A stretch of DNA of 64,000 nucleotides, from positions 248,001 through 312,000 of IMG/VR virus record IMGVR_UViG_3300042391_000634; one strand, written 5' to 3'. Positions 1 to 54,923 of this stretch are shown one piece after another. Position numbers and translations under genes: made by a program. Numbering within the stretch: position 1 is the stretch's first letter; every line of letters begins with the position of its first letter. The notes beneath the pieces were generated by a model that saw only the letters and a program-made list of their open reading frames with translations, ran no database searches and was not told the origin of the DNA.

Positions 1-1
1 T

Positions 2-6656: not shown

Positions 6657-6657
6657 A

Positions 6658-11683: not shown

Positions 11684-11685
11684 TA

Positions 11686-33920: not shown

Positions 33921-34451
33921 ATGATACACCTTATAAAAGGTATATTAACAAAAGAAGAATGTAACATTCTTAAAAACCAGTTTGATATTGATAAACAAAT
34001 CAATCCATCACTAGATAAATCAAAGGTTACAGGTAACACCTATGGGTATGAACCTTCTTATATTTTCAATGAATATTTAGATAAACTTAAATCATCTGTT
34101 TTAAAACTTAATTATAAAATAGATGATTTAAGAAATGTCAATTCATATATCAGAGAATACAAAAATAATGATTTTTTAAAAAAACATAGAGATAGAGACG
34201 ATATTAGTGTTACTATGTCGATATGTGTAGAATCAACAATAAATAAAGTTTGGCCATTAAATGCTGAAATTGATGATATAGAATATTCTTTTAACACAAA
34301 TGTAGGCGATGCTATTGTGTTATTTGATGCGGATAAAATATATCATTGGAGAGATATTTTAATTTGTAATCAAAATGAAAGAGTAATACAATTCTTTTTA
34401 CATTGGACACCCATTATACAGATTACCAAAAAAATAAAAACAATAATATAA
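33921..34451 (+). CDS. 2OG-Fe(II) oxygenase
   Basis: 'LTKEEC','R.Y....L.KHRD','ISVT','GDA','HWR','Q.FLHW'. Confidence 0.8.
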   Translation: MIHLIKGILTKEECNILKNQFDIDKQINPSLDKSKVTGNTYGYEPSYIFNEYLDKLKSSVLKLNYKIDDLRNVNSYIREYKNNDFLKKHRDRDDISVTMSICVESTINKVWPLNAEIDDIEYSFNTNVGDAIVLFDADKIYHWRDILICNQNERVIQFFLHWTPIIQITKKIKTII

Positions 34452-34996
34452 TGAATTATAATTTTAAATATTATGGCCAAGTAGATGTATCTAATATCGA
34501 TAATTTAATTGTAAATACCCAATTAAATTGGGATGAATACACATATAGACAAACCGATAGATATGGTCAATCCGATACTAAAACAATACCATTATTATGG
34601 TCTGAAGATTTTGTTGAAAATATAACTTGGAAATCTTATGAAATTTTTAAAGATAGTTTAATTGAAATAGAAAATAATTTAATCAATTTATTGGGAGAAG
34701 GTAAAATTGAAGTTGCACTATTAATTAATTTACCAAAAAATAAAAAAATATTACCACACATAGATTCTGGATATGAACATTTTTTTAAAACTAAAAGAAT
34801 ACATATACCAATTACAACAAATGATAAATGTAACTTTATGGTTGGTGAAGAAATTGTACAAATGAAACTAGGTGAAATATGGGAAATTGATAATGCAAAT
34901 AAAGTACATGGTGTTAATAATGATGGGAATACTGATAGAATTCATTTATTAATAGACTATCAAATTTCTGACAAAAAAATAAAAACATTATTATAA
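34451..34996 (+). CDS. Aspartyl/asparaginyl beta-hydroxylase-like oxygenase
   Basis: 'ILPHID','RIHIPITTN','GEIWEIDN..VHGVNN.G.TDRIHLLID'; ATG 34451 overlaps upstream TAA. Confidence 0.85.
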   Translation: MNYNFKYYGQVDVSNIDNLIVNTQLNWDEYTYRQTDRYGQSDTKTIPLLWSEDFVENITWKSYEIFKDSLIEIENNLINLLGEGKIEVALLINLPKNKKILPHIDSGYEHFFKTKRIHIPITTNDKCNFMVGEEIVQMKLGEIWEIDNANKVHGVNNDGNTDRIHLLIDYQISDKKIKTLL

Positions 34997-35009
34997 ACAA
35001 AAATAAATT

Positions 35010-35591
35010 ATGGCATTTACATATACAATAGTTCCTGAATTTTTAACAAAAGAAGAATGTAATATAATATTAAATTTTTCATTAAAAGAATTAAAATTAG
35101 AACCATCTCAAATTGTTACTCATTATATGGGTGGTAATGTTGATACCGATATAAGGAAGTCAAATCAAGTATTTTTTCCATATTATAAAGAATTTCCATT
35201 TTTATTAGAAAAAATGAGTAAATTGTTAAATAAACATATTGACGTTAAAGGATTTGATTTGGATTATGAACATAGTCAATTTCAATTTACAGAGTATAAT
35301 TCAGGTGACCATTTTGGTTGGCATAGAGATGTAATTGGTGAAAAAATTACAAATTATGATAGATATTGTTCGTTAGTGATACAATTAAATGATGAATATG
35401 AAGAAGGTGATTTACAAATAAAAGATATAGAAGATAAAACATTAACAGTTGAAAAAGGTGTTGGCAATTTAATATTATTTTTATCTAATATTGAACATAG
35501 AGTAGTGCCAGTAAAAAGTGGAGTTAGATACACATTAGTTAATTGGGTAAAATTAATGGAAAAAAAAGATTATAAAAAAACATTATTATGA
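35010..35591 (+). CDS. 2OG-Fe(II) oxygenase (PKHD/prolyl-hydroxylase-like)
   Basis: 'QFTEY..GDHFGWHRD','QLNDEYEEGDL','F.S..EHRV.PV.SG.RYTLV.W'. Confidence 0.9.
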   Translation: MAFTYTIVPEFLTKEECNIILNFSLKELKLEPSQIVTHYMGGNVDTDIRKSNQVFFPYYKEFPFLLEKMSKLLNKHIDVKGFDLDYEHSQFQFTEYNSGDHFGWHRDVIGEKITNYDRYCSLVIQLNDEYEEGDLQIKDIEDKTLTVEKGVGNLILFLSNIEHRVVPVKSGVRYTLVNWVKLMEKKDYKKTLL

Positions 35592-36597: not shown

Positions 36598-37266
36598 ATG
36601 GCAACTCTTTGGACATTTGGAGATTCGTTTACTGCAGGTGATGGTTGTGTGCAAAATATAGCAATTAGGGATGGTGATTTTAAATATTATAATGAATATA
36701 AACAATCGGATAGTGATATATGGTCAAATATATTAAGTAAAACTATTGGATTTGAAGTAAAAAATATGGGAAAAAGTGGAGCAAGTAATGATTATATTTT
36801 AGATTCTATTATTGACAATTTTGATATGATAGAACCAAATGATGTGGTTATAATTGAAAAAACATTTTACCAAAGATTTGATATTCCTAAATCTGGTGGT
36901 GATATATTCCAAACAATTTATGCTGAGGGCATCTACCAACTTTCTATTGATTTAAAAATGAACAGATACTTTTGTGAAGATAAATTAGAAAGTGAAACAA
37001 TATTAAATTATGGTGTTTTATTTGCTGGTCATAAATTATTTAAACAAAGACACGATAAACGATTTAAATTTATAAAAACCCAATTGAATAACAAAGGAAA
37101 CAAAATATTAATGTGGGACGTATTGGATGTTTTAAATGGTAAATTTGAAACAATATCGGAACATACAAAAGGTAAAATAAAAGATTATCATTTTAGTTTT
37201 AATGGTCACAAAACATTTAGTGAACTTTTATTTAAAAAATTATACACCAAACCCGAATTAATTTAA
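36598..37266 (+). CDS. SGNH-like protein
   Basis: 'WTFGDSFTAG','GKSGASN','DYHFSFNGH'. Confidence 0.65.
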   Translation: MATLWTFGDSFTAGDGCVQNIAIRDGDFKYYNEYKQSDSDIWSNILSKTIGFEVKNMGKSGASNDYILDSIIDNFDMIEPNDVVIIEKTFYQRFDIPKSGGDIFQTIYAEGIYQLSIDLKMNRYFCEDKLESETILNYGVLFAGHKLFKQRHDKRFKFIKTQLNNKGNKILMWDVLDVLNGKFETISEHTKGKIKDYHFSFNGHKTFSELLFKKLYTKPELI

Positions 37267-38336: not shown

Positions 38337-39467
38337 ATGGAAGATAATATTTTAAATAAAAAAATAAATATAAATTTTATAGACGGACCTTTTGTTAAAA
38401 TAATAGAAGATACTACATTACATTATAAAATTGAATTTATTGATAGAGATGACAATAAAATTATTTTTGAAATAGATTTAATAAGTAATAAATGGGCCAA
38501 ATGTTCAAAAAAATACTTTGTAAATTGGTTAATTAAAATAAAAGGTATTGATAATGATTTTTATTATGAACATACTTTTGATTTAAACAAAAAAAGAGTT
38601 TTTGTTTTTTTAGAATCACACTTACTTGGAGATACCTTAGCTTGGATTGATCAAGTCGATAGATTTAGAATAAAAAATAAATGTGAGGTGATATGTGCAA
38701 CATCCCATAATAATATCTTCAAAGAACAATACCCCAATATTCAATTTACATCACCTACTTTACCTAAATCAAATGAGTCTGATTTTTATGCACTATATCG
38801 ATTAGGGGTTTGGCGTATTAATGATGTAATCGATATGGATAGACATAAAATTGATCCAAGAAAATTACCATTAATACAAGTTGGTTCTGATATTTTAGGA
38901 ATTAATTATAAAGAAACAAAACCAAAATTAGCAAACTTAGGTAAAACAAAACAAAAACTAGTTACAATAGGATTTCACGGTGGAGGACAATTTAAATATT
39001 GGAATAACCCGACAGGATGGCAAGAAGTTGTGAATTTTTTAAATTTAGAAGGATATGAGGTTAGATTATTATCAAATGAAGAAGATGGTTATATGGGTAA
39101 TCGGCCACCAAATGGTATAACTAAACAACCAAATGGACCATTAAGTGAAATAATTAAAGTTTTACAAGAATCTGTTTTATTTATCGGTATTAGTAGTGGT
39201 TTAAGTTGGTTATCTTGGGCGGCTGGAACACCAACAATAATAATATCGGGATTTACAGATATTCATTTAGAACCAATAAATGGAATAACAAGAATCATTA
39301 ATAAAGATGTATGTAATAGTTGTTGGTCTAAATATGAATTTAAACCTCATAATTGGTATTGGTGTCCTGTTTATGCCGGTACTGAAAATAGATTTGAGTG
39401 TTCTAAATCAATAACTGGTGAAGTGGTAATTAAAAAAGTAAAAAATTTAATTAATAATTTATCATGA
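38337..39467 (+). CDS. TibC/Aah-like protein O-glycosyl(heptosyl)transferase
   Basis: 'LGDTLAW','KYWNNPTGW.EVV','FIG.SSGLSWL.WA','ISGFT', iron-finger-like 'CNSCW..WCP..FEC'. Confidence 0.75.
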   Translation: MEDNILNKKININFIDGPFVKIIEDTTLHYKIEFIDRDDNKIIFEIDLISNKWAKCSKKYFVNWLIKIKGIDNDFYYEHTFDLNKKRVFVFLESHLLGDTLAWIDQVDRFRIKNKCEVICATSHNNIFKEQYPNIQFTSPTLPKSNESDFYALYRLGVWRINDVIDMDRHKIDPRKLPLIQVGSDILGINYKETKPKLANLGKTKQKLVTIGFHGGGQFKYWNNPTGWQEVVNFLNLEGYEVRLLSNEEDGYMGNRPPNGITKQPNGPLSEIIKVLQESVLFIGISSGLSWLSWAAGTPTIIISGFTDIHLEPINGITRIINKDVCNSCWSKYEFKPHNWYWCPVYAGTENRFECSKSITGEVVIKKVKNLINNLS

Positions 39468-40587: not shown

Positions 40588-43323
40588 ATGAAAATACTTG
40601 CACACACATGTTTTATTGGAGTCACAGGATATGCTAATCACGCAAAGTCCTTTTTTTGTGCTCTGAACAAACACCACACCGTAAAAGTTAGAAATTCAAC
40701 CATAGGTGGTGGTTGGAAGGGAATGAATAACACCCCGCATGATAATGAACCTTACATCACAGATGAGATGAAGGATATGTTAATTCTTCAAACTCTTAAT
40801 AATTCGGACGGTAGTAGGTCGGATTACCCAATCTACGGATATAGCGGTGATTATAATACAGACGTTAATATTGTTTTGGTAGATACAAACAACCATTATT
40901 TCTATGACAATTATGTGGGGTATAATATTGCATATAACGTTTGGGAATCAACACGTTATCCCGATAATTTCTTTAAAAGATTACATTACTTTGACGAGGT
41001 ATGGGTACCAACACAATGGCAATTTGATTGTTTGGTTGAACAGGGTTATCCATCACATAAAATATCGATAGTCCCTGAGGGAGTTGATGTGGATACATTT
41101 AAACCGTTAACTAAGACACCAAAGAAGGACAAATTTAGGTTTTTACACTTTGGTAGATGGGATTATAGAAAAGGAACAACAGAGGTTTTAAGAGCGTTTA
41201 GTGAGACATTTAAAGATAGGGACGATGTGGAGTTAATTGCATCAGTTGAAAACCCTTATCCATTTGACGGACTTAAAACAACTGAAGATAGGGTTAAACA
41301 TCACAATATAGACACAACGAACATTAAATTTATAAAATTCACACCACAGGAAGAATATGTAAAATATTTGCAAGAGGGTGATGTGTTTGTTTCATGTGCT
41401 AGAAGTGAAGGTTGGAACTTACCTTTAATTGAGGCAATGGCATGTGGAACACCTTCAATTTATTCCGATTGGGGGGGACAATTACAATTTGCAGAAGGTA
41501 AAGGTGTACCAGTTGGAATTAAAGGATTGAGACCTGCAAATATTGAGCATAAAGAATGGCCAGGTGAATATTGTGAACCAGATTGGGATGATTTGAAGTG
41601 GAAGATGAGACAGGCGTACGATTATAACACGGCAATGTGGGTAAAGGCCGTTAGTGACGCAAAAGATATTCATGAAAAATTTAATTGGGATACGGTTGCA
41701 AAGGGAGCATGTGATATATTGGAAAGAAATAAAAAACCATTTGCGTTTGTAACTACCGGTAACTTAGGATACATGCCGGTGATTGAAAAGTTAGTTCAAT
41801 CATTATTAGAATTTTCTAAACGTAAGATTATAGTATATGGTATTGATTGTGAGGTTCCATTTGATTATCCAAATATTATTAAAAGAACGATAACAACACA
41901 AAAGATATCTGAACATGATAAATGGTATTGGAAACAAATGGCATGTATTGAATCCGTTAATGAAGGGTTTGATAACTATGTTTGGATGGATGGTGATGTT
42001 GTCGTTAATTACAACGTAGATAATATCAAATCTTATTTCAAAGAGATTGAAAACTATCCAATATCCGATATACATGTTCAAGAAGAATTCTTTGGTTGGT
42101 ATGATGATGGAACTAAATCACAATTATTTAATGAACGAGTTGCTGAAGATTGGGGAGTTCAAAAACAACAACCATATATGCATGTATGTATGTATGTTTA
42201 TAATAAAGAATGTAAATGGTGGTTTGAAGAGATCCTTAATCATTATGTGGAAGTAATGAAAGATGGTGGTAAAGACTACAAACGTTTATACCTATGGAAT
42301 GATGAAGGTATTGATAATGCAATGAGATGGAAATACAACTTTAAAAAACATTTACCACTATCTAATTTTGACACATCATCTTATGATGGTGATGACGGAA
42401 TGACAAATGAGACACAACATCATTTCTTAAAGTTTTGGAATGAAGAAGGACCACAAAATTTCAATAGAATATTTGGATATCAAGCAATACCAAAAGATAA
42501 GAATCAAATTCTTTATTTCCACGGTAATAAGAATGCACAGATGTCCGATTTTATGATGGACTTTATTAAGATGAAACGTGATAATAGTTTTTACAAATCA
42601 GAACAATTTTATACATCGTTAGATGTTAACACATATAAGTTAGAGAACTTAGGTGACATCAAAGATGTACCGGGAGGTACTATGGAAATTGCAGATAAGT
42701 ATGGATGGGCAAGAGCAATCTACCATGAAATTTTTAATTTACATGATTACTATAAAGGTGGTAATGAAAGAAGAATAAATGAAGGTGATATTGTGGTGGA
42801 CTTAGGTGGTAACATGGGTATCTTCAATAGGTGGGCATATCATCAAGGTGCGAGTAAAGTAATCTCATTTGAACCAGATAGACGATATTTTAAATTACTG
42901 TCACTTAACGCTGACCCACGTTCAGTATTATTCAACGCAGCCGCGGCACATGAAATTGGAGAATTGAATTTATATGAGAGTAGTCACTTAGGTGGGTCAA
43001 ATGTTTTTGGTGTTGAAGGTCAAGAAGGATATAGTGTTAAAACATATACTTTAAACTATCTTTTTGAAAGTGGTTTAATTGACCATATCGATTTTCTTAA
43101 GGTTGATATTGAAGGAGCAGAACATGCTGCATTTGCTGGTATCAGTGATGAGAACTTACAAAAAGTTAAAACCATCGCAATGGAATATCATCATAGTCAT
43201 TTTGAATACGATGAAGAATTAAGAACAAATTTTATAAATAAAATGAATGGATTAGGGTTCAATTCATATCTATTATTTATGGGTAATAATAACAGTTTAC
43301 AAATGATATATTTTTGGAAATGA
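40588..43323 (+). CDS. Fusion: GT4 glycosyltransferase + GT-A-like domain + FkbM methyltransferase
   Basis: 'GRWDYRKG','SEGWNLPLIEAMACG'; 'WMDGD','NDE','FHG.K'; 'VVDLGGNMG','FEP','LKVDIEGAE'. Confidence 0.85.
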   Translation: MKILAHTCFIGVTGYANHAKSFFCALNKHHTVKVRNSTIGGGWKGMNNTPHDNEPYITDEMKDMLILQTLNNSDGSRSDYPIYGYSGDYNTDVNIVLVDTNNHYFYDNYVGYNIAYNVWESTRYPDNFFKRLHYFDEVWVPTQWQFDCLVEQGYPSHKISIVPEGVDVDTFKPLTKTPKKDKFRFLHFGRWDYRKGTTEVLRAFSETFKDRDDVELIASVENPYPFDGLKTTEDRVKHHNIDTTNIKFIKFTPQEEYVKYLQEGDVFVSCARSEGWNLPLIEAMACGTPSIYSDWGGQLQFAEGKGVPVGIKGLRPANIEHKEWPGEYCEPDWDDLKWKMRQAYDYNTAMWVKAVSDAKDIHEKFNWDTVAKGACDILERNKKPFAFVTTGNLGYMPVIEKLVQSLLEFSKRKIIVYGIDCEVPFDYPNIIKRTITTQKISEHDKWYWKQMACIESVNEGFDNYVWMDGDVVVNYNVDNIKSYFKEIENYPISDIHVQEEFFGWYDDGTKSQLFNERVAEDWGVQKQQPYMHVCMYVYNKECKWWFEEILNHYVEVMKDGGKDYKRLYLWNDEGIDNAMRWKYNFKKHLPLSNFDTSSYDGDDGMTNETQHHFLKFWNEEGPQNFNRIFGYQAIPKDKNQILYFHGNKNAQMSDFMMDFIKMKRDNSFYKSEQFYTSLDVNTYKLENLGDIKDVPGGTMEIADKYGWARAIYHEIFNLHDYYKGGNERRINEGDIVVDLGGNMGIFNRWAYHQGASKVISFEPDRRYFKLLSLNADPRSVLFNAAAAHEIGELNLYESSHLGGSNVFGVEGQEGYSVKTYTLNYLFESGLIDHIDFLKVDIEGAEHAAFAGISDENLQKVKTIAMEYHHSHFEYDEELRTNFINKMNGLGFNSYLLFMGNNNSLQMIYFWK

Positions 43324-43982
43324 GTACATTAGATAATTTGGCAAAAGTGTATGGAACTGATAAGTCTTCCGACAATCACAATTATTGTGTTAAATATGAA
43401 AAGTATTTACCATTTAACAGATATGATAAATTAAACATATTGGAGATTGGTGTCTTAGATGGTAAGTCACTATTAACTTGGAAGGATTATTATTATCGTT
43501 CTAATATTTTAGGTATTGATATTAATGCTGATTGTAAAAAATACGAAGAGGAAAGAATTTCAGTTGAGATTGGATCACAAGCTGATAATGTTTTCTTGCT
43601 TGATATAATGAGAGAGTATGGACCATTTGATATAATATTAGATGATGGGTCACATATGAATGAACATGTTATTTATTCTTTTGAACATCTGTTTGAATCT
43701 ATTAAACCTGGTGGGGTTTATATAGTTGAAGATGTTGCAACATCCTATTTCCCTTGGTACGGTGGGGGTTTAAATGACCCTAAGAGTATGATGGAATACT
43801 TCAAGAAATTAACGGATGATATTAACTTTAGAGGTGTTGAGAACTTAGATGACCAAGCCGCAGTATGGGATCGACGAGAAGATAAACTAATACCGTATTC
43901 AAATAAAGTACAACCTGATTGTAGAACTGACATAGAGTCAATAACCTTCCTTAATGGAATAATTTTAATAAGAAAAAGATAA
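43320..43982 (+). CDS. Sugar O-methyltransferase-like (MycE-type) SAM methyltransferase
   Basis: 'YGTDK..H.Y..YE','LEIGV','FDIILDDGSH','GGVYIVED'. Confidence 0.8.
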   Translation: MSTLDNLAKVYGTDKSSDNHNYCVKYEKYLPFNRYDKLNILEIGVLDGKSLLTWKDYYYRSNILGIDINADCKKYEEERISVEIGSQADNVFLLDIMREYGPFDIILDDGSHMNEHVIYSFEHLFESIKPGGVYIVEDVATSYFPWYGGGLNDPKSMMEYFKKLTDDINFRGVENLDDQAAVWDRREDKLIPYSNKVQPDCRTDIESITFLNGIILIRKR

Positions 43983-46105
43983 TGGGATACACACAATTTA
44001 ATGATGATGTTTTTGTAGTTGACTGCTGGCCGGATAATAAAGATAAAGAAAATGTTTTAAAAAAATTACTTACAAGTTTAAAGGTATATAATTGTCCCAT
44101 TATATTATGTGGACATTACCCTGTTTCACCTGAGATACAAGTATTGGCTGATTATTATCTATATGATGGTAATAATGATATATTATTAGAAAAGGATTTT
44201 GCTGAGTATGGTATTAATAGTGATAGATGGACAGATATGGGAACATATAAGTTAACCAATAAAATTGATTTTCATCATGACTATGCAATTTGGTTAACAA
44301 TGAAAAACGCTTTCAATCTTGTTAAACAATTAGGTAAACAATATATTCATTTTTTAGAGTATGATAATTTACCGGACGAAACACAATATCGACAAGCATT
44401 TATGGAATATATTAGAAGTAACGATGCGGTGGTTTATGAGTATTCAGAAGGTTCAACAAAAGAAAGTAATCCATATAGTTCGGCTTATATCTTTTCAATT
44501 AAGACAGATGTTGCGTTAAAGATGATTGGTCTTATTAATAGTAAAAAAGAATACTTTAAGGGTAAACCTGATAGATGGCAATTAGAAAAACAATTATATC
44601 AATCAATTAAAAAGGTTACCAATAGCATATTCGTTAGTAAGTATATTCCGAACGATAATGAACTTAACATTTTTGCGGTATGGAATAGAAATGGTATATT
44701 AAAAAACGGCGTTCGTTTACAAACATATTTGGGTGTAGACGACTCTGGTCAATTGTTTATTCATTTTATATCGGGGTTTTCAGAACAACCAGCAAATAAA
44801 GATTATTTAATTGAAGTTAACTATGGAACATATAAAAAATTCCATACGGTTAAAAAGGGAGAATACAAATTAGAAAGACTTGGTGAATATAAACAAAATG
44901 AGGTAGTTGAAGTACGTCATCAAGGATTGGAAATATTCACACAGGAACTTAAACACGAAATGAATGAGTTTAGAAGAAATAATAAATTATCAAGAAATAA
45001 CGTTAACACAAATAGAAAAACAAACATTTATTTTGTAGATGGTCCATTTGTTGAAATTGTTGAAGATGGTGATTATCTATATAATGTTCAATTTATAAAT
45101 AATAAAAATAATAAAATTGAATATGAATTAAACCTAAAGAGTAATAATTGGGCTAGATCGGCTAAAAAATACTACGTAGATTGGTTAATTAAAATTAAAG
45201 GTGTTGATAATGACTATTATCATGAACATCATATGAATTTAGAAAATAATAGGGTTATGATTTGTTTTGAATCAAAATCTTTAGGTGATAGTTTAGCTTG
45301 GATACCATATGTTGAGAAATTCAGGGTTAAAAATAAATGTAAAGTAATATGTTCTACATTTAATAATGATTTATTTAAGAATCAATACCCCGAAATTGAA
45401 TTTGTTTTACCCGGTAGTAATGTTAATAATATTAATGCACTTTATCGTTTAGGTTTATTTTATGATGATAAAAGACAAATAGATTATACCAAACATCAAA
45501 CAGATCCAAAGAAAGAACCTTTATTAAAAGTGGGGTCCGATATCTTGGGGTTAGATTATGAGGAAATTAAACCTAAATTGGCTAAATTAGGGAAGAAGAA
45601 AAAGAAAATGGTATCAATTGCGATTCATTCAACCGCTCAATGTAAATATTGGAATAACCCAACGGGTTGGCAGGATGTCGTAGATTACCTTAAAGCTAAG
45701 AATTATGAAGTCAGACTCCTATCAAGAGAAGAAGATGGATATATGGGTAACAAAAATCCAAAGGGTGTAACGATACAACCCACTAGTAAATTAACAGATA
45801 TCATAAAAGTGTTACAAGAATCTGAATTATTTATAGGTATAAGTAGTGGATTAAGTTGGTTATCATGGGCTTCAGATACACCTACAGTTATAATTTCAGG
45901 ATTTACTGATGTTGATTTAGAACCTACCGATGGTGTAACAAGAATAATCAATAAAAATGTATGTAATAGTTGTTGGTCTGACCATGAATTTAATCCAGGT
46001 AATTGGAATTGGTGTCCTGTTCATGAGAATACAGAAAGACAATTTGAATGTTCAAAAACTATTACAAGTGATGATGTTATATTAAGAATTGAAAAACTTT
46101 TATAA
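43982..46105 (+). CDS. GT-A-like N-terminal domain + TibC/Aah-like protein glycosyltransferase
   Basis: N-half 'HFLEYD'; C-half paralogous to 38337 ('LGDSLAW','KYWNNPTGW','SSGLSW','CNSCW..WCP..FEC'). Confidence 0.75.
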   Translation: MGYTQFNDDVFVVDCWPDNKDKENVLKKLLTSLKVYNCPIILCGHYPVSPEIQVLADYYLYDGNNDILLEKDFAEYGINSDRWTDMGTYKLTNKIDFHHDYAIWLTMKNAFNLVKQLGKQYIHFLEYDNLPDETQYRQAFMEYIRSNDAVVYEYSEGSTKESNPYSSAYIFSIKTDVALKMIGLINSKKEYFKGKPDRWQLEKQLYQSIKKVTNSIFVSKYIPNDNELNIFAVWNRNGILKNGVRLQTYLGVDDSGQLFIHFISGFSEQPANKDYLIEVNYGTYKKFHTVKKGEYKLERLGEYKQNEVVEVRHQGLEIFTQELKHEMNEFRRNNKLSRNNVNTNRKTNIYFVDGPFVEIVEDGDYLYNVQFINNKNNKIEYELNLKSNNWARSAKKYYVDWLIKIKGVDNDYYHEHHMNLENNRVMICFESKSLGDSLAWIPYVEKFRVKNKCKVICSTFNNDLFKNQYPEIEFVLPGSNVNNINALYRLGLFYDDKRQIDYTKHQTDPKKEPLLKVGSDILGLDYEEIKPKLAKLGKKKKKMVSIAIHSTAQCKYWNNPTGWQDVVDYLKAKNYEVRLLSREEDGYMGNKNPKGVTIQPTSKLTDIIKVLQESELFIGISSGLSWLSWASDTPTVIISGFTDVDLEPTDGVTRIINKNVCNSCWSDHEFNPGNWNWCPVHENTERQFECSKTITSDDVILRIEKLL

Positions 46106-46139
46106 TTTGGTGATTTTTTTCATTTAATTTAAAATTATC

Positions 46140-46150
46140 AAGTATTTATA
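46140..46150 (+). promoter_or_regulatory. Putative late-promoter motif AAGTATTTATA
   Basis: 19 nt upstream of tail fibre ATG. Confidence 0.5.
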
Positions 46151-46169
46151 TGGGTAACAATTAAACCAT

Positions 46170-48197
46170 ATGAAAATATTTGACGCAAACATCTCTGGAT
46201 CACTAAACGTATCGGGCTCAGCCCATTTCTTTAATGATCTTACAGTAGACGGAACACTAAACGCCACCATCAGTGGAACATCCACAAACGCACTATCCTT
46301 AAACACAACGGGTTCCGCTCGTTTTGCTACAACAGGTAGTAACGTATTTAAAGCCGACCAAACAATTAGCGGTTCACTTTATGTGACTACCGATATAATA
46401 TTAAATGGACAATCATATACTGGACAAACTTCTGGTACATCAGGAACTAGTGGATCTAACGGTTCTTCAGGAACCTCAGGATCTAGTGGATCTAACGGTT
46501 CTTCAGGAACCTCAGGATCTAGTGGTTCAGATGGTTCTTCAGGAACTTCAGGAACATCAGGTTCTTCAGGATCTAACGGATCTAGTGGAACATCAGGTTC
46601 TTCAGGATCTAACGGATCTAGTGGAACATCAGGATCTAGTGGTTCTAACGGTTCTTCAGGAACATCAGGTTCTTCAGGATCTAACGGATCTAGTGGAACA
46701 TCAGGATCTAGTGGTTCTTCAGGAACATCAGGAACTAGTGGTTCTTCAGGAACTGCGGGTACATCAGGTTCTTCAGGTACCGTTACCTTATCAGGAACAC
46801 AAGACAATGGTTTATTAACACTTAATGGATCTTCTCCAAATGTGTCTGTAGAATCTAATTTAACATATGACGGATCTTTATTTAAGGTTAATTCAAACAC
46901 AACAATTACAGGTTCATTGACCATTACCGCAAACTTAAACGTTTTAGGTTCTTCATCAATCACATATACTACTGCATCTCAATTAAGAGTAAATGATAAT
47001 GTTATAACGGTTAATACCGCATCGCCAGGTGTAAGATTTGGTGGTTTATCTGTAATGGATAGTGGATCAAATAGTAGTACGGGATCTATATTTTGGGATT
47101 CATTAAATAACAGATGGGTATATCAACAAGAATCAGGATCATCTTACACAGGTGGTATCATAATGTCTGGTCCAAGAAACAATGGGGCTTTAGGAAGTGA
47201 AACTACTTTAACAAACAATAAAGTTGCAAAATCTACGGGTGGAGATCATCTTGGTGATAGTAATATCAGTGACGACGGAACGACGGTTACAATTAGTACA
47301 AATACAGAAATTACAGGTTCATTAAAGGTAACAAATGGTATCACAGGTACTTTAACAGGTAATATCACAGGTAATGCGGCAACGGTAACAACAAATGCTA
47401 ACTTAACAGGTAATGTAACCTCAGTTGGTAATTCAACGACAATAGCTGCGGGAGTTGTAACCGATTCAATGTTAGCTGGTTCTATATCAAACGCTAAATT
47501 AACTAACTCATCTGTAACGGTTTCGGCAGGAACAGGTATGAGTGGTGGTGGTGCGGTATCATTAGGTGGTACAGTGACATTAACAAACGCGGGTGTAACC
47601 TCAATCACAACAAATACAGGATTAAGTTCAAACGTAGGTGCAACAGGTGCGGTTACGATTACAAATACAATAACCAATAACAACCAATTAACAAATGGTG
47701 CGGGATATCTTTCAACCGCCGTAACCTCAGCAGTGGCTGGTACGGGTGTTGGGGTAAGTGCAGCAACAGGAGCCGTAACATTCTCAATCGGTCAAGCGGT
47801 AGCAACATCATCAAACGTTCAATTTAACTCATTGGGTGTAGGAACTGCGGGACCAGTAACAGCAGGTTTAATCAGAGCAACAAATGATGTTATTGCGTTC
47901 TACGGTTCTGATGAAAGACTAAAAGAAAACATCACACCAATTGAAAATTCCTTAGATATCTTAAAACAAATAAATGGTTATTACTTCGATTGGAAGGAAA
48001 TGCCAGGTATTCATGAGAACGAAGGTCATGATATAGGGGTTGTAGCACAAGAAATTGGTGCTGTTTTACCTGAAATCGTAACAACAAGAGAGAATGGTTA
48101 TATGGCCGTTAAATACGAAAAATTAGTTGCATTGTTAATTCAAACAAACAAAGAATTATTAAATCGTGTTGAGGCTTTAGAAGCTAAAATAAAATAA
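46170..48197 (+). CDS. Tail fibre protein with Gly-X-Y Ser/Thr repeat and C-terminal intramolecular chaperone (Peptidase S74)
   Basis: 'SDERLKENI','GVVAQE...PE.V','V.YEKLVALLI...KEL' coiled coil; Thr/Gly/Ser-rich shaft. Confidence 0.85.
   Translation: MKIFDANISGSLNVSGSAHFFNDLTVDGTLNATISGTSTNALSLNTTGSARFATTGSNVFKADQTISGSLYVTTDIILNGQSYTGQTSGTSGTSGSNGSSGTSGSSGSNGSSGTSGSSGSDGSSGTSGTSGSSGSNGSSGTSGSSGSNGSSGTSGSSGSNGSSGTSGSSGSNGSSGTSGSSGSSGTSGTSGSSGTAGTSGSSGTVTLSGTQDNGLLTLNGSSPNVSVESNLTYDGSLFKVNSNTTITGSLTITANLNVLGSSSITYTTASQLRVNDNVITVNTASPGVRFGGLSVMDSGSNSSTGSIFWDSLNNRWVYQQESGSSYTGGIIMSGPRNNGALGSETTLTNNKVAKSTGGDHLGDSNISDDGTTVTISTNTEITGSLKVTNGITGTLTGNITGNAATVTTNANLTGNVTSVGNSTTIAAGVVTDSMLAGSISNAKLTNSSVTVSAGTGMSGGGAVSLGGTVTLTNAGVTSITTNTGLSSNVGATGAVTITNTITNNNQLTNGAGYLSTAVTSAVAGTGVGVSAATGAVTFSIGQAVATSSNVQFNSLGVGTAGPVTAGLIRATNDVIAFYGSDERLKENITPIENSLDILKQINGYYFDWKEMPGIHENEGHDIGVVAQEIGAVLPEIVTTRENGYMAVKYEKLVALLIQTNKELLNRVEALEAKIK
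46434..46784 (+). repeat. Coding tandem repeat: 39 Gly-X-Y triplets (GSS/GTS/GSN) with a 36-nt higher-order unit
   Basis: Repeated GGTTCTTCA/GGAACATCA/GGATCTAGT/GGATCTAAC; unit GSNGSSGTSGSS. Confidence 0.95.
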
Positions 48198-48209
48198 TTA
48201 TATTAAATG

Positions 48210-48249
48210 ATACTCACCACGTCCTAAAAAAATGTGGTGAGTATTTATA
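48210..48249 (+). terminator. Hairpin after tail fibre, overlapping a TATTTATA motif
   Basis: ATACTCACCAC (48210-20) pairs with GTGGTGAGTAT (48234-44); TATTTATA at 48242-49. Confidence 0.6.
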
Positions 48250-48278: not shown

Positions 48279-48497
48279 ATGGGTACAGTACCAGCAACGG
48301 GAACCGAAGTAAGTATGGGAAGAATTAGTGTAGTTTTAGGACTGGCAGCAACACCAGGTCAAGTACAAGTAGGTTTGAACTCAACTTTAGGTGTTGGTCG
48401 TAATAGGTCATATTCAGGAATTGCTAGTATCCCAAGTGGATCTGAAAGTGCTGAAGGAGCATCTTTCGGTGGTTTATCAGGTTCAGGTACATATTAA
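48279..48497 (+). CDS. Small Gly/Ser-rich protein, probable tail-fibre-associated
   Basis: 'P.TG.EVSM..I' N-terminus typical of small genes following S74 fibres; late motif upstream. Confidence 0.55.
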   Translation: MGTVPATGTEVSMGRISVVLGLAATPGQVQVGLNSTLGVGRNRSYSGIASIPSGSESAEGASFGGLSGSGTY

Positions 48498-53574: not shown

Positions 53575-54306
53575 TTAATTTTTTTTATACATAAAGTTAT
53601 AAACACCACAATCTTCCACATCACATGAAACGTGTATGTTGTTTAACCATATTTTAGGGGTTTTTGTTGGTGTGTAATCGGATTGACCCCTATTACAAAG
53701 AATTAACCAATCTTCATATGTTTTATAATAGTAATGATTTAATTGAATAATATCTGTAGGGCCGTTGGGATTGAATGGGCCTCTAAAAAAATTCCTATTA
53801 GTGTCCATTAATTTATTTGATGGGTTGTGAGGTAAAGACATTGTTGATTCACTTTTTAAATTCAATAAAGTTTTTATATGATGATTAACATCTTTATCTC
53901 TAAATGTAAATTGTTTTATCAATGAATTTTTATTTTCATTATCTCTAACTAATTTATTATTAGAACCAAACATATACCAGTTCATCGATATTCCAAATTC
54001 ATTATGGTATTCTAATATAAATTCTTTAATATTAGAATGTTTTTTTAGATGTATAAATTCATCACAATCAATGAAGGCAACCCAGTCATAATCATTTTTA
54101 TATTTAGAAATAAAATCATTATACGATTTTACTTGCTTGTGCTTACCTGGAAAATCAACAAGTATAATATTAGGATGGTTAATTTTACATTTCCAATCGT
54201 TTTGATAAATTATAATATCGTCAAAACCTAATTTTAAATGATAATTACACCACTCCTCGATATAATGGTCCTCATCCTTTGCAATACACATAACCGATAT
54301 TCTCAT
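53575..54306 (-). CDS. GT2/GT92-like glycosyltransferase
   Basis: 'IAKDE..YI.EW..YH..LGFD','FIDCDEF','W..FG','LNHY'. Confidence 0.8.
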   Translation of the reverse strand: MRISVMCIAKDEDHYIEEWCNYHLKLGFDDIIIYQNDWKCKINHPNIILVDFPGKHKQVKSYNDFISKYKNDYDWVAFIDCDEFIHLKKHSNIKEFILEYHNEFGISMNWYMFGSNNKLVRDNENKNSLIKQFTFRDKDVNHHIKTLLNLKSESTMSLPHNPSNKLMDTNRNFFRGPFNPNGPTDIIQLNHYYYKTYEDWLILCNRGQSDYTPTKTPKIWLNNIHVSCDVEDCGVYNFMYKKN

Positions 54307-54923
54307 AATGAACTATAGTAGTTGTTTTGTTTTTCTTGACGATCAATCGTCTTATGGTGTTGTATACAATATTCTTCATCTAATGGTAATGATGAAAATT
54401 TCTGACCACCTATTATTCGTTCGTGAACCTTACCATACCAAGTCATTCCTTTACGGTATATTCGTCCTTGAGCATCAGGAAAGTTTACCCATCCTTTTTT
54501 ATTAACATTCCAACCCCATTTATTAATATGTTCTTGTGTTATACCATTAACAGTATTAATACGAGGAACAAATATTAAATCAACCTTTGGATTTAATTCT
54601 AATATCTGATGGAGATTTTTAATTACATATTCACTAACCATTTCATCGGCATCTATTTGATAGATATAATCTCCCTGACAGTAATCATTCAATTTGTTTT
54701 TCCAATCCGCAAAGTTACCACCAAAATCAAACCCTCTCCACGTTTGAACGTGAGGGAATTTATTATATGGTAATAAGAAATCTAATATTTCGGGATTGCC
54801 GTTCTTCTCATCATAGAGAATAACAATCTCATCTTCCTTTCTTTTATGTTCAAATAAAAATGGAACTAATCTTTTTATTTCCTCTAATTCATTACAAACT
54901 GTAATTGCAAAACTTATTTTCAT
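54303..54923 (-). CDS. GT2 glycosyltransferase
   Basis: 'ITVCNE','IDADE','PD.Q.R','VHE','HHK'. Confidence 0.8.
   Translation of the reverse strand: MKISFAITVCNELEEIKRLVPFLFEHKRKEDEIVILYDEKNGNPEILDFLLPYNKFPHVQTWRGFDFGGNFADWKNKLNDYCQGDYIYQIDADEMVSEYVIKNLHQILELNPKVDLIFVPRINTVNGITQEHINKWGWNVNKKGWVNFPDAQGRIYRKGMTWYGKVHERIIGGQKFSSLPLDEEYCIQHHKTIDRQEKQNNYYSSL

What the first reader, a model, noticed from the sequence alone, without database searches (positions are those of the whole stretch)
43982..48197. TibC/Aah-like protein glycosyltransferase directly upstream of a Pro-free Gly-Ser/Thr collagen-like tail fibre
Seen: 39 uninterrupted Gly-X-Y triplets (46434-46784) in which X/Y are almost all Ser/Thr/Asn and never Pro. 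The preceding gene and a paralog at 38337 have TibC-family motifs including the Cys iron finger. Known: TibC/Aah heptosylate many Ser residues of adhesins; S74 chaperones trimerise fibres; glycosylated Thr can replace hydroxyproline in stabilising collagen (Riftia cuticle collagen). Inference: a glycosylation-stabilised triple helix or polyglycine-II bundle with about 70 potential O-glycan sites per chain.
Basis: partly seen in the sequence, partly recalled or inferred. Interest (0 to 1): 0.74.

Follow-up and report, generated by a model that had tools for sequence, protein, structure and literature searches.

The report
Phage fibre with sugar-coating enzyme partner
A giant lake-water phage encodes fibres built from hundreds of proline-free Gly-(Thr/Ser)-Ser triplets next to enzymes of the TibC family, which sugar-coats bacterial adhesins, and this enzyme-plus-repeat pairing recurs in many unrelated phages and in bacteria, pointing to a widespread, undescribed kind of glycosylated fibre.

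Summary
ORF 46170-48197 (675 aa) has exactly 39 uninterrupted Gly-X-Y triplets (46434-46784), with no Pro or Lys; X is Ser/Thr and Y is mostly Ser. It ends in a Peptidase_S74 chaperone domain.

The upstream gene (43982-46105) is a GT-A domain fused to a full TibC-type glycosyltransferase: PDB 4rap E 3e-52, model TM 0.86, catalytic Asp and four iron-finger Cys kept. ORF 38337-39467 is a 60%-identical stand-alone copy.

New here: the pairing is general.
- The genome holds four more such fibres just upstream of the window.
- 8 of 10 viral contigs found through the enzyme carry such fibres.
- Of viral contigs sampled by the repeat alone, 16 of 26 long repeat-rich ones carry the enzyme, against 0 of 9 repeat-poor. 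Among complete genomes it is 6 of 6 against 0 of 5.
- The median distance between the two is 8.6 kb.
- A tree splits the family. One clade sits beside Gly-Ser/Thr tracts, in phage fibres and in bacterial lipoprotein tails. The classical clade sits beside AIDA-type autotransporters.

Most likely the enzyme O-glycosylates Ser in a G-(T/S)-S tract.

Not shown: the sugar (the adenine-binding Arg is lost and the phage has no heptose pathway), the glycosylation itself, and the triple helix.

The parts
38337..39467 (+). Stand-alone TibC-family glycosyltransferase (376 aa), 60% identical to the C-terminal part of the 707-aa enzyme.
   Evidence: It matches PDB 4rap at E 9.5e-51 over TibC residues 27-384 and scores 264.2 bits on TIGR04414. 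It is the only one of 147 family domains with Gly at the position of TibC Thr226. It lies in a slot that holds other genes in close relatives.
40588..43323 (+). 911-aa multi-domain enzyme: an N-terminal GT4 glycosyltransferase, an unassigned middle region, and a C-terminal FkbM methyltransferase.
   Evidence: Pfam Glycos_transf_1 matches aa 178-299 and Methyltransf_21 matches aa 751-880; TIGR01444 fkbM_fam also matches. Full-length homologues at 51% identity lie beside the TibC-like gene in L007, L009, L019, L022 and L008. The AF2 model was unusable (pLDDT 35.8).
43314..43982 (+). 222-aa class-I methyltransferase (Methyltransf_24-like), the middle gene of the cassette.
   Evidence: Pfam E 1.9e-5, just under the cut-off. 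Homologues at 43-55% identity hold the same position in L007, L008, L009, L019 and L022 and in L183-L188.
43982..44986 (+). N-terminal third of the 707-aa enzyme (aa 1-335): a GT-A-fold domain (aa 1-220) plus a beta-sandwich (aa 238-322).
   Evidence: AF2 model with pLDDT 89.2. Foldseek matches GT-A enzymes: 3cgx, alpha-1,3-galactosyltransferase, GlcAT-P and the LH3 glycosyltransferase domain, with E about 1e-5 and TM 0.4-0.5. This is weak; activity is not shown.
44987..46105 (+). TibC-type module of the 707-aa enzyme (aa 336-707): beta-barrel, GT-B catalytic domain, thumb and four-Cys iron finger.
   Evidence: It matches 4rap at E 2.8e-52. Foldseek against 4rap_D gives TM 0.86 and rmsd 2.6 A over 373 columns. 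Asp436, Thr551, Lys555, Trp626 and Cys661/664/678/690 align with TibC D110, T226, K230, W305 and C339/342/358/370. Ile607 replaces R286.
46142..46150 (+). GTATTTATA motif 19 nt upstream of the fibre's ATG; a candidate late promoter.
   Evidence: There are 22 copies on the genome's + strand, and 20 lie within 60 nt upstream of an ATG ORF. These ORFs include large terminase, portal, endolysin and another collagen-like fibre. Promoter function is inferred.
46170..46433 (+). Fibre N-terminal domain (aa 1-88), conserved in orthologues; presumed attachment part.
   Evidence: It is nearly identical in L183 and similar in L186-L188, while the middle of the protein is swapped.
46434..46784 (+). 39 uninterrupted Gly-(Ser/Thr)-(Ser/Asn) triplets (aa 89-205): the proposed O-glycosylation tract and collagen-like rod.
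   Evidence: Evidence is. Orthologues have 38-51 triplets. The same unit, X = T/S and Y = S in 77-78%, holds over more than 10,000 triplets in other phages and in bacterial lipoprotein tails.
46785..47906 (+). Ser/Thr/Gly/Asn-rich shaft and distal part of the mature fibre (aa 206-579).
   Evidence: PHROGs tail-fibre families match (phrog_8215 E 3e-31, phrog_5668 E 1.5e-26). The region is mosaic between orthologues.
47907..48197 (+). Peptidase_S74 intramolecular chaperone domain (aa 580-675) plus the stop codon. Ser580 and Lys585 are spaced as in a Ser-Lys dyad.
   Evidence: Pfam E 2.2e-17. It is the only S74 domain in the genome. Self-cleavage is inferred from the family.
48212..48242 (+). 9-bp stem with a 13-nt loop just after the fibre's stop codon; it overlaps the next GTATTTATA motif (48241-48249).
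   Evidence: Read directly from the sequence. The terminator scan did not list it, because it has no T run. Function is unknown.
48279..48497 (+). 72-aa Gly/Ser/Ala-rich ORF that follows the fibre gene in all close relatives.
   Evidence: Called genes of 72-75 aa hold the same position in L183, L184 and L186-L188. It has its own GTATTTATA motif. Function is unknown.

Best explanation
The region is a fibre-glycosylation cassette of a 335.6-kb freshwater jumbo phage.

The fibre. It has an N-terminal attachment domain, a (Gly-Thr/Ser-Ser)39 tract, a Ser/Thr-rich shaft, and a C-terminal S74 chaperone. The chaperone is expected to trimerise the chains and then cut itself off at Ser580. The gene appears to be transcribed late, from a GTATTTATA-type promoter.

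The proposed mechanism. In the host cytoplasm, the TibC-type GT-B module of the 707-aa enzyme transfers a sugar from a nucleotide-sugar to Ser hydroxyls of the tract. The stand-alone paralogue may do the same. The most likely acceptor is the near-invariant Ser in the Y position, because TibC and Aah modify Ser only. The fused GT-A domain and the GT4 domain of the 911-aa protein would extend the glycan. The FkbM and Methyltransf_24 methyltransferases would O-methylate it.

The same enzymes probably also serve the four much larger fibres of this type encoded just upstream of the window (133-211 triplets each).

The product would be a densely glycosylated, stiff rod. It would be about 33 nm long if the three chains wind into a collagen-type triple helix, which is the likelier form in a trimeric fibre. 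The glycans would supply the stability that Pro/Hyp or Lys-Asp/Glu salt bridges supply in other collagens.

What is shown: the enzyme family and fold, the conserved catalytic residues, the cassette, the co-occurrence, the clustering and the clade structure.

What is inferred: that the enzyme acts on the tract, which residue it modifies, which sugar it uses, the methylation, the triple helix and the timing.
For: Enzyme identity:
- PDB TibC matches at E 1e-52 and 1e-51.
- Both proteins score above the TIGR04414 cut-off.
- The AF2 model (pLDDT 89) superposes on 4rap at TM 0.86.
- Across 147 family domains, the catalytic Asp is kept in 147, the Lys in 146, the Trp in 147 and each Cys in 143.

Conserved cassette:
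- The GT4-FkbM gene, the methyltransferase gene and the N-domain-TibC gene are kept at 45-52% identity in other viral contigs.
- The Gly-Ser/Thr fibre with S74 lies upstream there and downstream here. Linkage therefore survives rearrangement.
- In close relatives the gene order matches the window's, with 38-51 triplets.

Forward test: 8 of 10 viral contigs found through the enzyme carry Gly-Ser/Thr collagen-like ORFs. The two without are fragments. The cultured Microcystis phage Mel-JY01 has 202 triplets 1.7 kb upstream of its FkbM-TibC fusion.

Reverse test, on contigs sampled only by a (GGN WSN WSN)x8 DNA pattern:
- 23 of 72 records carry the enzyme.
- Among contigs of at least 40 kb: 16 of 26 with at least 30 such triplets, against 0 of 9 with fewer (Fisher p 0.0015).
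- Among genomes at least 90% complete: 6 of 6 against 0 of 5 (p 0.002).
- For scale, only 4 of 50,697 deposited phage records match the enzyme at all.

Clustering: the median distance from enzyme to repeat is 8.6 kb, and 4.9 kb in a 548-kb genome. The combined p is 0.002. The genes are directly adjacent in 66-kb, 69-kb, 121-kb and 548-kb phages.

Bacteria:
- In the 24 genome loci most like the phage enzyme, 17 hold Gly-Ser/Thr tracts within 10 kb.
- Where read, these are C-terminal tails of small lipoproteins. The next 56 loci hold none.
- A branch with 100% support separates 40 rows (all viral rows plus these bacteria, 29 with a tract in the held DNA) from 55 classical rows with none.
- 4 of 4 sampled classical loci have AIDA-type autotransporters next door.

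The repeat unit is the same everywhere: Y is Ser in 77-78% of triplets, and Thr is confined to X.

Background from papers: TibC modifies Ser, not Thr (PMC4358343). The tract lacks Pro and charged pairs, the usual stabilisers of collagens. (Gly-Pro-Thr)10 folds only when galactosylated (PMC11923368).

FkbM methyltransferase is fused or adjacent to the enzyme in many of these phages: 14 of 23 records with the enzyme, against 5 of 19 without.

The late-promoter-like motif is shared with the terminase, portal and endolysin genes.
Against: - There is no direct evidence that any of these fibres is glycosylated. Everything rests on homology and gene neighbourhood.
- Related phages share both genes by descent, so the counts are not fully independent.
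- Ten of 26 long, repeat-rich contigs lack the enzyme. Most are incomplete, but the enzyme may not be obligatory.
- The donor sugar is unknown. TibC's adenine-contacting Arg286 is Ile in both window enzymes, and the phage encodes no GmhA-like or nucleotidyltransferase gene.
- The paralogue has Gly in place of the phosphate-binding Thr.
- TibC's known acceptors lie in beta-helix repeats, not in Gly-X-Y. The fibre's shaft is also Ser/Thr-rich and could be the real target.
- The 60-kb island holds many other sugar enzymes that could serve another purpose.
- The triple helix is unverified. Ser and Thr are poor helix formers without modification, and the bacterial tracts sit on lipoproteins with no evident trimerisation domain.
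Confidence: 0.62

Rival explanations
1. The tract is glycosylated as proposed, but it is not a collagen triple helix. It is a periodic array of G-(T/S)-S glycosylation sites that forms an extended, mucin-like bottle-brush spacer. The three-residue period reflects what the enzyme recognises, together with slippage of 9-nt DNA units, and not helix packing.
For: - The identical unit occurs as a 20-39-triplet C-terminal tail on small bacterial lipoproteins next to the same enzyme clade. These proteins have no recognisable trimerisation domain.
- Ser is strongly preferred at Y, and Thr is excluded from Y, everywhere. Helix packing does not explain this.
- The tract has no Pro and no salt-bridge pairs.
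- The DNA is a recent nested tandem repeat, and the triplet number varies between close strains.
Against: - Gly is kept at every third residue without a slip over runs of up to 861 triplets in many lineages. That is the hallmark of a triple helix, and a mere glycosylation-site array would not require it.
- In the phage the tract lies inside a protein that a C-terminal S74 chaperone trimerises.
- In the larger paralogues the tracts are framed by conserved junction motifs, as expected for a helix held in register.
- Pfam Collagen matches strongly.
Confidence: 0.22
2. Fibre and enzymes are neighbours but not partners. The island builds or alters some other glycan, such as host surface polysaccharide, another virion protein or the Pro/Thr-rich protein. 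The Gly-Ser/Thr tract is then an unmodified collagen-like or flexible segment.
For: - The window is a 60-kb sugar island. It includes UDP-sugar dehydrogenase, epimerases, carbamoyltransferase, APS kinase, several GT2, radical SAM and GDSL genes. That is more than one fibre glycan seems to need.
- A 1106-aa Pro/Thr-rich protein is an alternative acceptor.
- Ten of 26 repeat-rich long contigs lack the enzyme.
Against: - The enzyme-tract pairing recurs in small phages without any such island, for example adjacent genes in 66- and 69-kb genomes.
- It also recurs in bacteria, beside lipoproteins.
- Repeat-poor controls never have the enzyme.
- The enzyme clade tracks the type of neighbour: tract against autotransporter.
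Confidence: 0.1
3. The TibC-like proteins act without catalysis, as ring-shaped assembly or targeting factors for the fibres. A family member in Burkholderia, BimC, is cited for a comparable non-catalytic role.
For: TibC forms a dodecameric ring that holds its substrates (PMC4358343). A paper on BimA/BimC that cites the TibC iron finger exists (PMC11499645; not read here). The paralogue has lost the phosphate-binding Thr.
Against: - The catalytic Asp, the Lys and the Trp are invariant or nearly so across the clade, including both window proteins.
- The enzymes are fused or adjacent to further glycosyltransferase and sugar-methyltransferase domains. That only makes sense if a glycan is built.
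Confidence: 0.04
4. The repeat is an assembly artefact or non-coding satellite DNA, so the ORF is not real.
For: Short-read contigs break inside the repeat, and one relative's scaffold has a 100-N gap there.
Against: - The frame is open from a conserved N-terminal domain through the repeat into an in-frame S74 domain.
- Orthologues from independent samples keep the frame with 38-51 triplets.
- Thousands of such triplets lie in long ORFs elsewhere.
Confidence: 0.02

Closest known systems
TibC/Aah bacterial autotransporter heptosyltransferases (BAHT; TIGR04414; PDB 4rap, 4rb4) acting on TibA/AIDA-I
   Same: - Same protein family and fold: beta-barrel, GT-B domain, thumb and four-Cys iron finger.
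- The catalytic Asp, the phosphate-binding Lys and the sugar-binding Trp are kept.
- Both are cytoplasmic enzymes, encoded next to their multi-site, Ser-rich repetitive substrate (PMC4358343).
   Different: - The phage genome has no autotransporter. The neighbour is a Gly-(T/S)-Ser tract protein.
- The enzymes fall in a separate, well-supported clade.
- The adenine-reading Arg286 is mostly lost in that clade, so ADP-heptose is not assured.
- The window enzyme is fused to a GT-A domain and travels with GT4 and FkbM domains.
- It is encoded by a phage.
BclA, the collagen-like exosporium glycoprotein of Bacillus anthracis
   Same: A trimeric surface filament whose Gly-X-Y region carries many O-linked oligosaccharides, including O-methylated sugars (PMC6222408 and PMC7793302).
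   Different: - By my recollection of the literature, not tested here, BclA's triplets are rich in Pro (mostly Gly-Pro-Thr) with the glycan on Thr in Y.
- The enzymes, so far as known, are not of the TibC family.
- It is bacterial, not viral.
Serine-rich repeat adhesins (Fap1, GspB, SraP) with GtfA/GtfB
   Same: It works alike: a long low-complexity Ser-rich tract is densely O-glycosylated in the cytoplasm by a dedicated GT-B enzyme encoded beside it, and further transferases then extend the glycan. This comparison rests on my own knowledge and was not tested here.
   Different: - The enzyme family differs (GT4-type against GT9/TibC).
- The repeats are dipeptides, not Gly-X-Y.
- Export depends on the accessory Sec system.
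- The proteins are from Gram-positive bacteria and are not virion proteins.
Virion glycosylation in mycobacteriophages (Freeman et al. 2023, cited in PMC12619734)
   Same: Phage-encoded glycosyltransferases decorate the phage's own structural proteins inside the host.
   Different: - The targets there are the C-termini of capsid and tail-tube subunits, not collagen-like fibres.
- Whether those enzymes are related to TibC was not checked here.
- The hosts are actinobacteria.
Glycosylated-threonine collagens (Riftia cuticle collagen; the galactosylated (Gly-Pro-Thr)10 model peptide)
   Same: It sets the precedent that O-glycans can replace hydroxyproline in holding a triple helix together (PMC11923368).
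   Different: There Thr sits in Y after a Pro in X. Here there is no Pro, Thr sits in X and Ser in Y. The animal enzymes are unrelated.
S74 intramolecular-chaperone fibres and spikes (endosialidase tailspikes, T5 L-shaped tail fibre)
   Same: The C-terminal Peptidase_S74 domain matches at E 2e-17, with a Ser and a Lys spaced as in the family's dyad.
   Different: The characterised members I know of carry no Pro-free Gly-Ser/Thr tract and are not paired with a TibC-type enzyme.

Membership tests
BAHT / TibC-Aah family (TIGR04414) | Sequence score above the curated family cut-off | tested here: met
   281.9 bits (707 aa) and 264.2 bits (376 aa) against a cut-off of 200. PDB 4rap matches at E 2.8e-52 and 9.5e-51.
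BAHT / TibC-Aah family (TIGR04414) | Fold: N-terminal beta-barrel, GT-B catalytic domain, beta-hairpin thumb and iron-finger insertion | tested here: met
   The AF2 model has pLDDT 89.2. Foldseek against 4rap_D gives target-normalised TM 0.86 and rmsd 2.6 A over 373 columns. The thumb is 3 residues shorter, with a Tyr-Met tip where TibC has Phe-Val.
BAHT / TibC-Aah family (TIGR04414) | Catalytic base Asp110, and ligand residues Lys230 and Trp305 | tested here: met
   Asp436, Lys555 and Trp626 of the 707-aa protein align with them. The three positions are kept in 147, 146 and 147 of 147 family domains.
BAHT / TibC-Aah family (TIGR04414) | Thr226, which contacts the beta-phosphate | tested here: inconclusive
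   It is Thr551 in the 707-aa enzyme but Gly in the 376-aa paralogue, the only exception among 147 domains.
BAHT / TibC-Aah family (TIGR04414) | Arg286, which reads adenine N1 (the basis of ADP-sugar use) | tested here: not met
   It is Ile in both window proteins. Arg is present in 54 of 55 classical-clade rows but only 12 of 40 rows of the Gly-Ser/Thr-linked clade.
BAHT / TibC-Aah family (TIGR04414) | Four Cys that bind one iron (Cys339, 342, 358, 370) | tested here: met
   Cys661, 664, 678 and 690 align with them. Each is kept in 143 of 147 domains. Metal binding itself was not tested.
BAHT / TibC-Aah family (TIGR04414) | Adjacent AIDA-I/TibA-type autotransporter substrate | tested here: not met
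   The phage genome has no Autotransporter domain, and the neighbour is the fibre. Four of 4 sampled classical-clade loci do have AIDA-type autotransporters next door.
BAHT / TibC-Aah family (TIGR04414) | Transfers heptose from ADP-heptose to Ser; assembles as a dodecamer | not testable with these tools
   This needs biochemistry. The phage has no SIS_2 (GmhA-type) or NTP_transferase gene, so any heptose donor would have to come from the host.
Collagen triple-helix repeat (PF01391) | Long uninterrupted (Gly-X-Y)n and a score above the Pfam cut-off | tested here: met
   39 triplets; 60.3 bits against 27.2. The four paralogues score 167-283 bits.
Collagen triple-helix repeat (PF01391) | Sequence-encoded helix stabilisers: Pro/Hyp in X/Y, or Lys-Gly-Asp/Glu salt-bridge triplets | tested here: not met
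   The 78 X/Y positions hold 0 Pro, 0 Lys, 0 Glu and 1 Asp. PMC11923368 reports KGD as 13% of viral collagen triplets.
Collagen triple-helix repeat (PF01391) | A trimerisation domain in the same chain | tested here: met
   An in-frame C-terminal Peptidase_S74 domain. The four larger paralogues have no Pfam S74 hit.
Collagen triple-helix repeat (PF01391) | Actual triple-helical conformation | not testable with these tools
Peptidase S74 intramolecular chaperone | Domain match, and a Ser and a Lys spaced as in the family's catalytic dyad | tested here: met
   PF13884 matches aa 580-637 at E 2.2e-17. Ser580 and Lys585 lie in the motif Gly-Ser-Asp-Glu-Arg-Leu-Lys. The dyad assignment is by analogy from my own knowledge; cleavage was not tested.

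The most novel reading that the evidence does not exclude
A widespread, unrecognised class of glyco-collagen. Proline-free, charge-free (Gly-Thr/Ser-Ser)n rods of 20 to more than 800 triplets depend on a dedicated clade of TibC-type O-glycosyltransferases, usually with an FkbM methyltransferase, to write a methylated glycan coat. That coat replaces hydroxyproline and salt bridges as the helix stabiliser. The same enzyme-tract module would be shared between the fibres of many aquatic phages (66 to 548 kb) and lipoproteins of Gammaproteobacteria and other bacteria. The enzyme may use a donor other than ADP-heptose.
Probability: 0.35. Interest if true: 0.9.

Novelty: new variant of a known kind. 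Interest (0 to 1): 0.78.

Why it matters
- It would be the first case of a TibC-family enzyme with a substrate that is not an autotransporter. It would also extend phage self-glycosylation from mycobacteriophage capsids and tails to the receptor-facing fibres of abundant freshwater phages.

- It bears on an open question in collagen biology: how a triple helix with neither proline nor salt bridges can fold. The system is bacterial and expressible, so glycans can be added or withheld at will.

- These repeats are very common in lakes. Summed k-mer depth over the repeat is 5,000-10,000 against 10-25 in the flanks in four metagenomes. A glycan coat on them would affect host recognition, particle stickiness and how the genes are annotated.

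- Public pipelines name these enzymes 'autotransporter strand-loop-strand O-heptosyltransferase'. For this clade that name is probably wrong.

- The bacterial lipoproteins with the same tail and the same neighbouring enzyme are an unexplored class of candidate glycolipoproteins.

Tried and rejected
- Trimer prediction of fibre aa 66-235 (complex prediction).

- AF2 of the 911-aa GT4-FkbM protein with a 7-row alignment. The model had pLDDT 35.8 and is unusable, so the middle domain stays unassigned. A GT-A/GT8-like guess from a 'DGD' motif is only a reading of the sequence.

- A phage-encoded heptose pathway. There is no SIS_2/GmhA and no NTP_transferase. The one small cytidylyltransferase-like ORF lies far away, at G000 54160-54459.

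- Asp/Asn beta-hydroxylase (window 34403-34996) as a conserved partner acting on Gly-Ser-Asn/Asp triplets. It was found in 0 of 42 other records, but the control genomes did not ring either, so this is a weak negative.

- Megablast of 24 kb of the window against deposited phages found no match.

- Literature. No paper combines TibC or heptosyltransferase with collagen-like phage proteins. Nothing was found on Mel-JY01. Papers on 'moraphages' and on a cyanomyovirus mention virion glycosylation only in passing. PMC10527164 (Freeman et al. 2023) could not be read.

- Sigma-70 promoter and terminator scans were at the level of shuffled controls and uninformative.

- Read laying used assembled contigs only, so it cannot give repeat-number variants within a population. 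The many 'joints' inside the repeat come from other organisms' repeats.

- A polyglycine-II bundle was rejected on composition: one Gly per three residues and no turns.

- An error of mine: one search searched PF05050 (FkbM) where I had meant PF05118. The result proved useful and is reported as what it is.

Full report
**Setting.** The window is bases 248001-312000 of a 335,630-bp viral record that CheckV rates as complete. GC content is 31%. Lake-water metagenomes hold it. Large terminase, portal and endolysin genes identify it as a tailed jumbo phage. The window itself is one long sugar-chemistry island. It encodes glycosyltransferases of families GT1/4, GT2 and GT9, FkbM and other methyltransferases, radical-SAM proteins, a UDP-sugar dehydrogenase, epimerases, a carbamoyltransferase, an APS kinase and GDSL esterases.

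ORF 46170-48197 (+) encodes 675 aa. Residues 89-205 (nt 46434-46784) are 39 uninterrupted Gly-X-Y triplets.
- X is Ser 24, Thr 15. Y is Ser 30, Asn 6, Asp 1, Ala 1, Val 1.
- There is no Pro, Lys, Arg or Glu, which leaves 69 Ser/Thr per chain.
- Pfam reports Collagen (60.3 bits, cut-off 27.2) and a C-terminal Peptidase_S74 domain (aa 580-637, E 2e-17).
- PHROGs reports tail-fibre families along the whole length.
- The DNA is a nested 9/18/36/72-nt tandem repeat.
- ORFs on the other strand and frame are repeat shadows.

The number 39 is 'as assembled'. Short-read contigs from four lakes end at 46476 and restart at 46742. The same gene in close relatives has 38, 43, 43 and 51 triplets, always in frame, and one scaffold has a gap there.

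**The enzymes are true TibC relatives.** The 707-aa product of 43982-46105 matches TibC (PDB 4rap) at E 2.8e-52. The 376-aa product of 38337-39467 matches at E 9.5e-51 over nearly the whole of TibC. The two are 60% identical. Both pass the curated cut-off of NCBIfam TIGR04414. An AlphaFold model of the 707-aa protein (pLDDT 89.2) superposes on TibC at TM 0.86 and rmsd 2.6 A.

I used the residue roles given in the TibC structure paper (PMC4358343).
- Kept in both proteins: the catalytic base Asp110, Lys230, Trp305, Phe368 and the four iron-binding Cys. These are near-invariant in 147 family domains.
- First departure: Arg286, which reads adenine N1 and explains the use of ADP-sugars, is Ile in both proteins.
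- Second departure: the paralogue alone has Gly at Thr226.

The first 335 residues of the 707-aa protein are an extra GT-A-fold domain plus a beta-sandwich (weak matches).

**The cassette is conserved.** Upstream lie a 911-aa GT4-...-FkbM protein (40588-43323) and a 222-aa methyltransferase (43314-43982). Viral contigs found through the enzyme keep all three genes at 45-52% identity. They also have a Gly-Ser/Thr collagen-like ORF ending in an S74 domain. There it lies upstream of the enzymes; here it lies downstream. Close relatives (63-92% identical enzymes, several on contigs of 320-340 kb) have exactly the window's gene order.

**There are more fibres outside the window.** The genome has five such proteins. 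The other four, of 893, 1631, 1200 and 1241 aa, lie at G000 226505-245424, just before the window. They hold 133, 211, 168 and 138 triplets of the same kind. Conserved junction motifs frame the tracts, and globular modules lie between them. A 1106-aa Pro/Thr-rich protein sits among the four. Only the window fibre has an S74 domain.

**Is the pairing more than neighbourhood? Forward test.** Eight of 10 viral contigs with the enzyme carry Gly-Ser/Thr collagen-like ORFs. The two exceptions are fragments of 6 kb and 37 kb. The cultured Microcystis phage Mel-JY01 has an open frame with 202 such triplets 1.7 kb upstream of its FkbM-TibC fusion protein.

**Reverse test.** I sampled viral contigs only by a degenerate DNA pattern for eight Gly-(S/T)-(S/T) triplets. 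I then searched their whole records with TIGR04414.
- 23 of 72 records are positive.
- Counting triplets in the held loci, contigs of at least 40 kb with at least 30 triplets are positive in 16 of 26 cases. Those with fewer are positive in 0 of 9 (p 0.0015).
- Genomes at least 90% complete split 6 of 6 against 0 of 5 (p 0.002).
- For scale, only 4 of 50,697 deposited phage records match the enzyme at all.

**Clustering.** The enzyme lies a median 8.6 kb from the sampled repeat. It is 4.9 kb away in a 548-kb genome and 8.6 kb away in a 249-kb one. The combined p is 0.002 for the 14 contigs of at least 60 kb. In 66-kb, 69-kb, 121-kb and 548-kb phages the genes are adjacent or a few genes apart. 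One of these fibres has 861 uninterrupted triplets.

**Bacteria show the same pairing.** The 80 genome loci most similar to the enzyme fall into two sets.
- Of the top 24, 17 have Gly-Ser/Thr runs within 10 kb. The other 56 have none.
- Where I read them, the bacterial tracts are 20-39-triplet C-terminal tails of small lipoproteins with a lipobox. They lie right beside the enzyme, in Methylococcales, Arenicellales and other Gammaproteobacteria.
- A maximum-likelihood tree of 95 domains has a branch with 100% SH-aLRT support. It separates 40 rows from 55 classical rows. The 40 are every viral row plus these bacteria, and 29 of them have a tract in the DNA held. None of the 55 has a tract.
- In the classical clade, 4 of 4 sampled neighbours are AIDA-type autotransporters.
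- Arg286 is kept in 54 of 55 classical rows but only 12 of 40 rows of the other clade.

So the type of neighbour changes with the enzyme clade. That is what one expects if the neighbour is the substrate.

**The repeat unit.** Over more than 10,000 viral and 411 bacterial triplets, Y is Ser in 77-78%. X is Thr (43-50%) or Ser (41-44%). Thr is rare in Y, at 4-9%. The sampling pattern treats X and Y alike, so this asymmetry is real. Since TibC modifies Ser and not Thr, the Y-position Ser is the likeliest acceptor (inference).

**Expression.** The motif GTATTTATA occurs 22 times on the + strand, and 20 copies lie just upstream of ATG ORFs. These include large terminase, portal, endolysin, the window fibre, the 72-aa ORF after it and one of the large fibres. 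The fibre is therefore probably a late, virion-associated gene (inference).

**Mechanism proposed.** See the best explanation. In brief, the TibC-type module O-glycosylates Ser of the G-(T/S)-S tract in the cytoplasm. The GT-A and GT4 domains extend the glycan, and the FkbM and second methyltransferases methylate it. FkbM is fused or adjacent to the enzyme in many of these phages: 14 of 23 records with the enzyme against 5 of 19 without. The S74 domain trimerises the chains and is cut off.

The tract has none of the usual collagen stabilisers. Viral collagens are normally rich in Lys-Gly-Asp salt bridges, and (Gly-Pro-Thr)10 folds only when galactosylated (PMC11923368). A glycan-dependent triple helix is therefore attractive, but it was not tested here. 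The lipoprotein tails keep the bottle-brush alternative alive.

**What remains unknown.**
- Whether glycosylation happens at all.
- Which sugar is used. Arg286 is lost, and the phage has no heptose pathway.
- Whether the shaft, which is also Ser/Thr-rich, is a target.
- Where on the virion the fibres sit.
- The role of the paralogue.
- Why 10 of 26 repeat-rich long contigs lack the enzyme.

**Comparison and novelty.** The enzyme belongs to the TibC family by sequence, fold and catalytic residues. It fails two functional hallmarks: the adenine Arg and the autotransporter partner. The system works most like the serine-rich-repeat adhesin/GtfAB and BclA systems, and it parallels virion glycosylation in mycobacteriophages. 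I found no paper linking TibC-type enzymes to collagen-like phage proteins. I rate it a new variant of a known kind, with a real chance of being a new class of glyco-collagen.

Noticed in passing
G000:C1:226505-245424 (locus L035), just upstream of the window: Four very large proline-free Gly-Ser/Thr collagen-like proteins (893, 1631, 1200 and 1241 aa; 133-211 triplets each). Conserved junction motifs frame the tracts, and repeated globular modules lie between them. None has a Pfam S74 domain.
   Followed up: partly
G000:C1:238248-241568 (L035:12248-15568): A 1106-aa protein made of Cys-containing globular modules joined by long Thr-Pro/Asp-Pro linkers. It sits among the collagen-like fibre genes and is a second candidate carrier of O-glycans. 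It has no Pfam hit.
   Followed up: no
G000:C1:245428-248574 (L040), running into window 1-574: A row of about 240-aa proteins, three of which have a LamG/ConA-like lectin fold. They lie between the fibre cluster and the sugar island and may be fibre-tip or glycan-binding proteins.
   Followed up: no
window 48279-48497: A conserved 72-75-aa Gly/Ser/Ala-rich ORF directly after the fibre gene in all close relatives. It has its own GTATTTATA motif, which overlaps a hairpin at 48212-48242.
   Followed up: partly
window 46142-46150 and 20 other places in G000: The motif GTATTTATA lies within 60 nt upstream of the ATG of the terminase, portal, endolysin and fibre genes and others. It is a candidate late promoter of this phage lineage.
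   Followed up: partly
window 34403-35591: An Asp/Asn beta-hydroxylase-like gene and a prolyl-hydroxylase-type 2OG-Fe(II) oxygenase gene lie side by side. Relatives carry one or the other in the variable slot where the window has the TibC paralogue. Hydroxylation of Asn/Asp in Gly-Ser-Asn/Asp triplets is conceivable, but the hydroxylase was not found in 42 other records (a weak negative).
   Followed up: partly
L199:11196-12089, L203:8542-8931 and 11285-11911, L210:8519-12604, L209:7505-8614, L191:11223-11588: Small bacterial lipoproteins with a lipobox, in Methylococcales, Arenicellales and other Gammaproteobacteria and in a Burkholderiaceae MAG. Their C-terminal tails are 8-39 Gly-Thr/Ser-Ser triplets, often ending in Asp runs. 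Each lies next to a TibC-type enzyme of the phage-like clade.
   Followed up: partly
window 46408-46811 in four lake metagenomes: Summed contig k-mer depth over the repeat is 5,000-10,000, against 10-25 in the flanks. More than 900 contigs per run were laid there at 90-95% likeness. DNA coding for this repeat is therefore extremely abundant in lake communities.
   Followed up: no
window 28669-30336, 31215-31649, 27333-27956, 36598-37266, 62283-62915: Carbamoyltransferase, APS kinase and several GDSL/SGNH genes in the island hint that the glycan may be carbamoylated, sulfated or acetylated.
   Followed up: no
window 59247-60588: Two adjacent N6/N4 DNA methyltransferase genes at the edge of the sugar island.
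   Followed up: no
L101/L172 (IMGVR_UViG_3300034062_003964, 113831-121467): An open frame of more than 3263 aa with 861 uninterrupted Gly-Ser/Thr triplets, which would be about 740 nm as a triple helix. It lies convergent with, and adjacent to, a 1527-aa TibC-FkbM fusion gene.
   Followed up: partly
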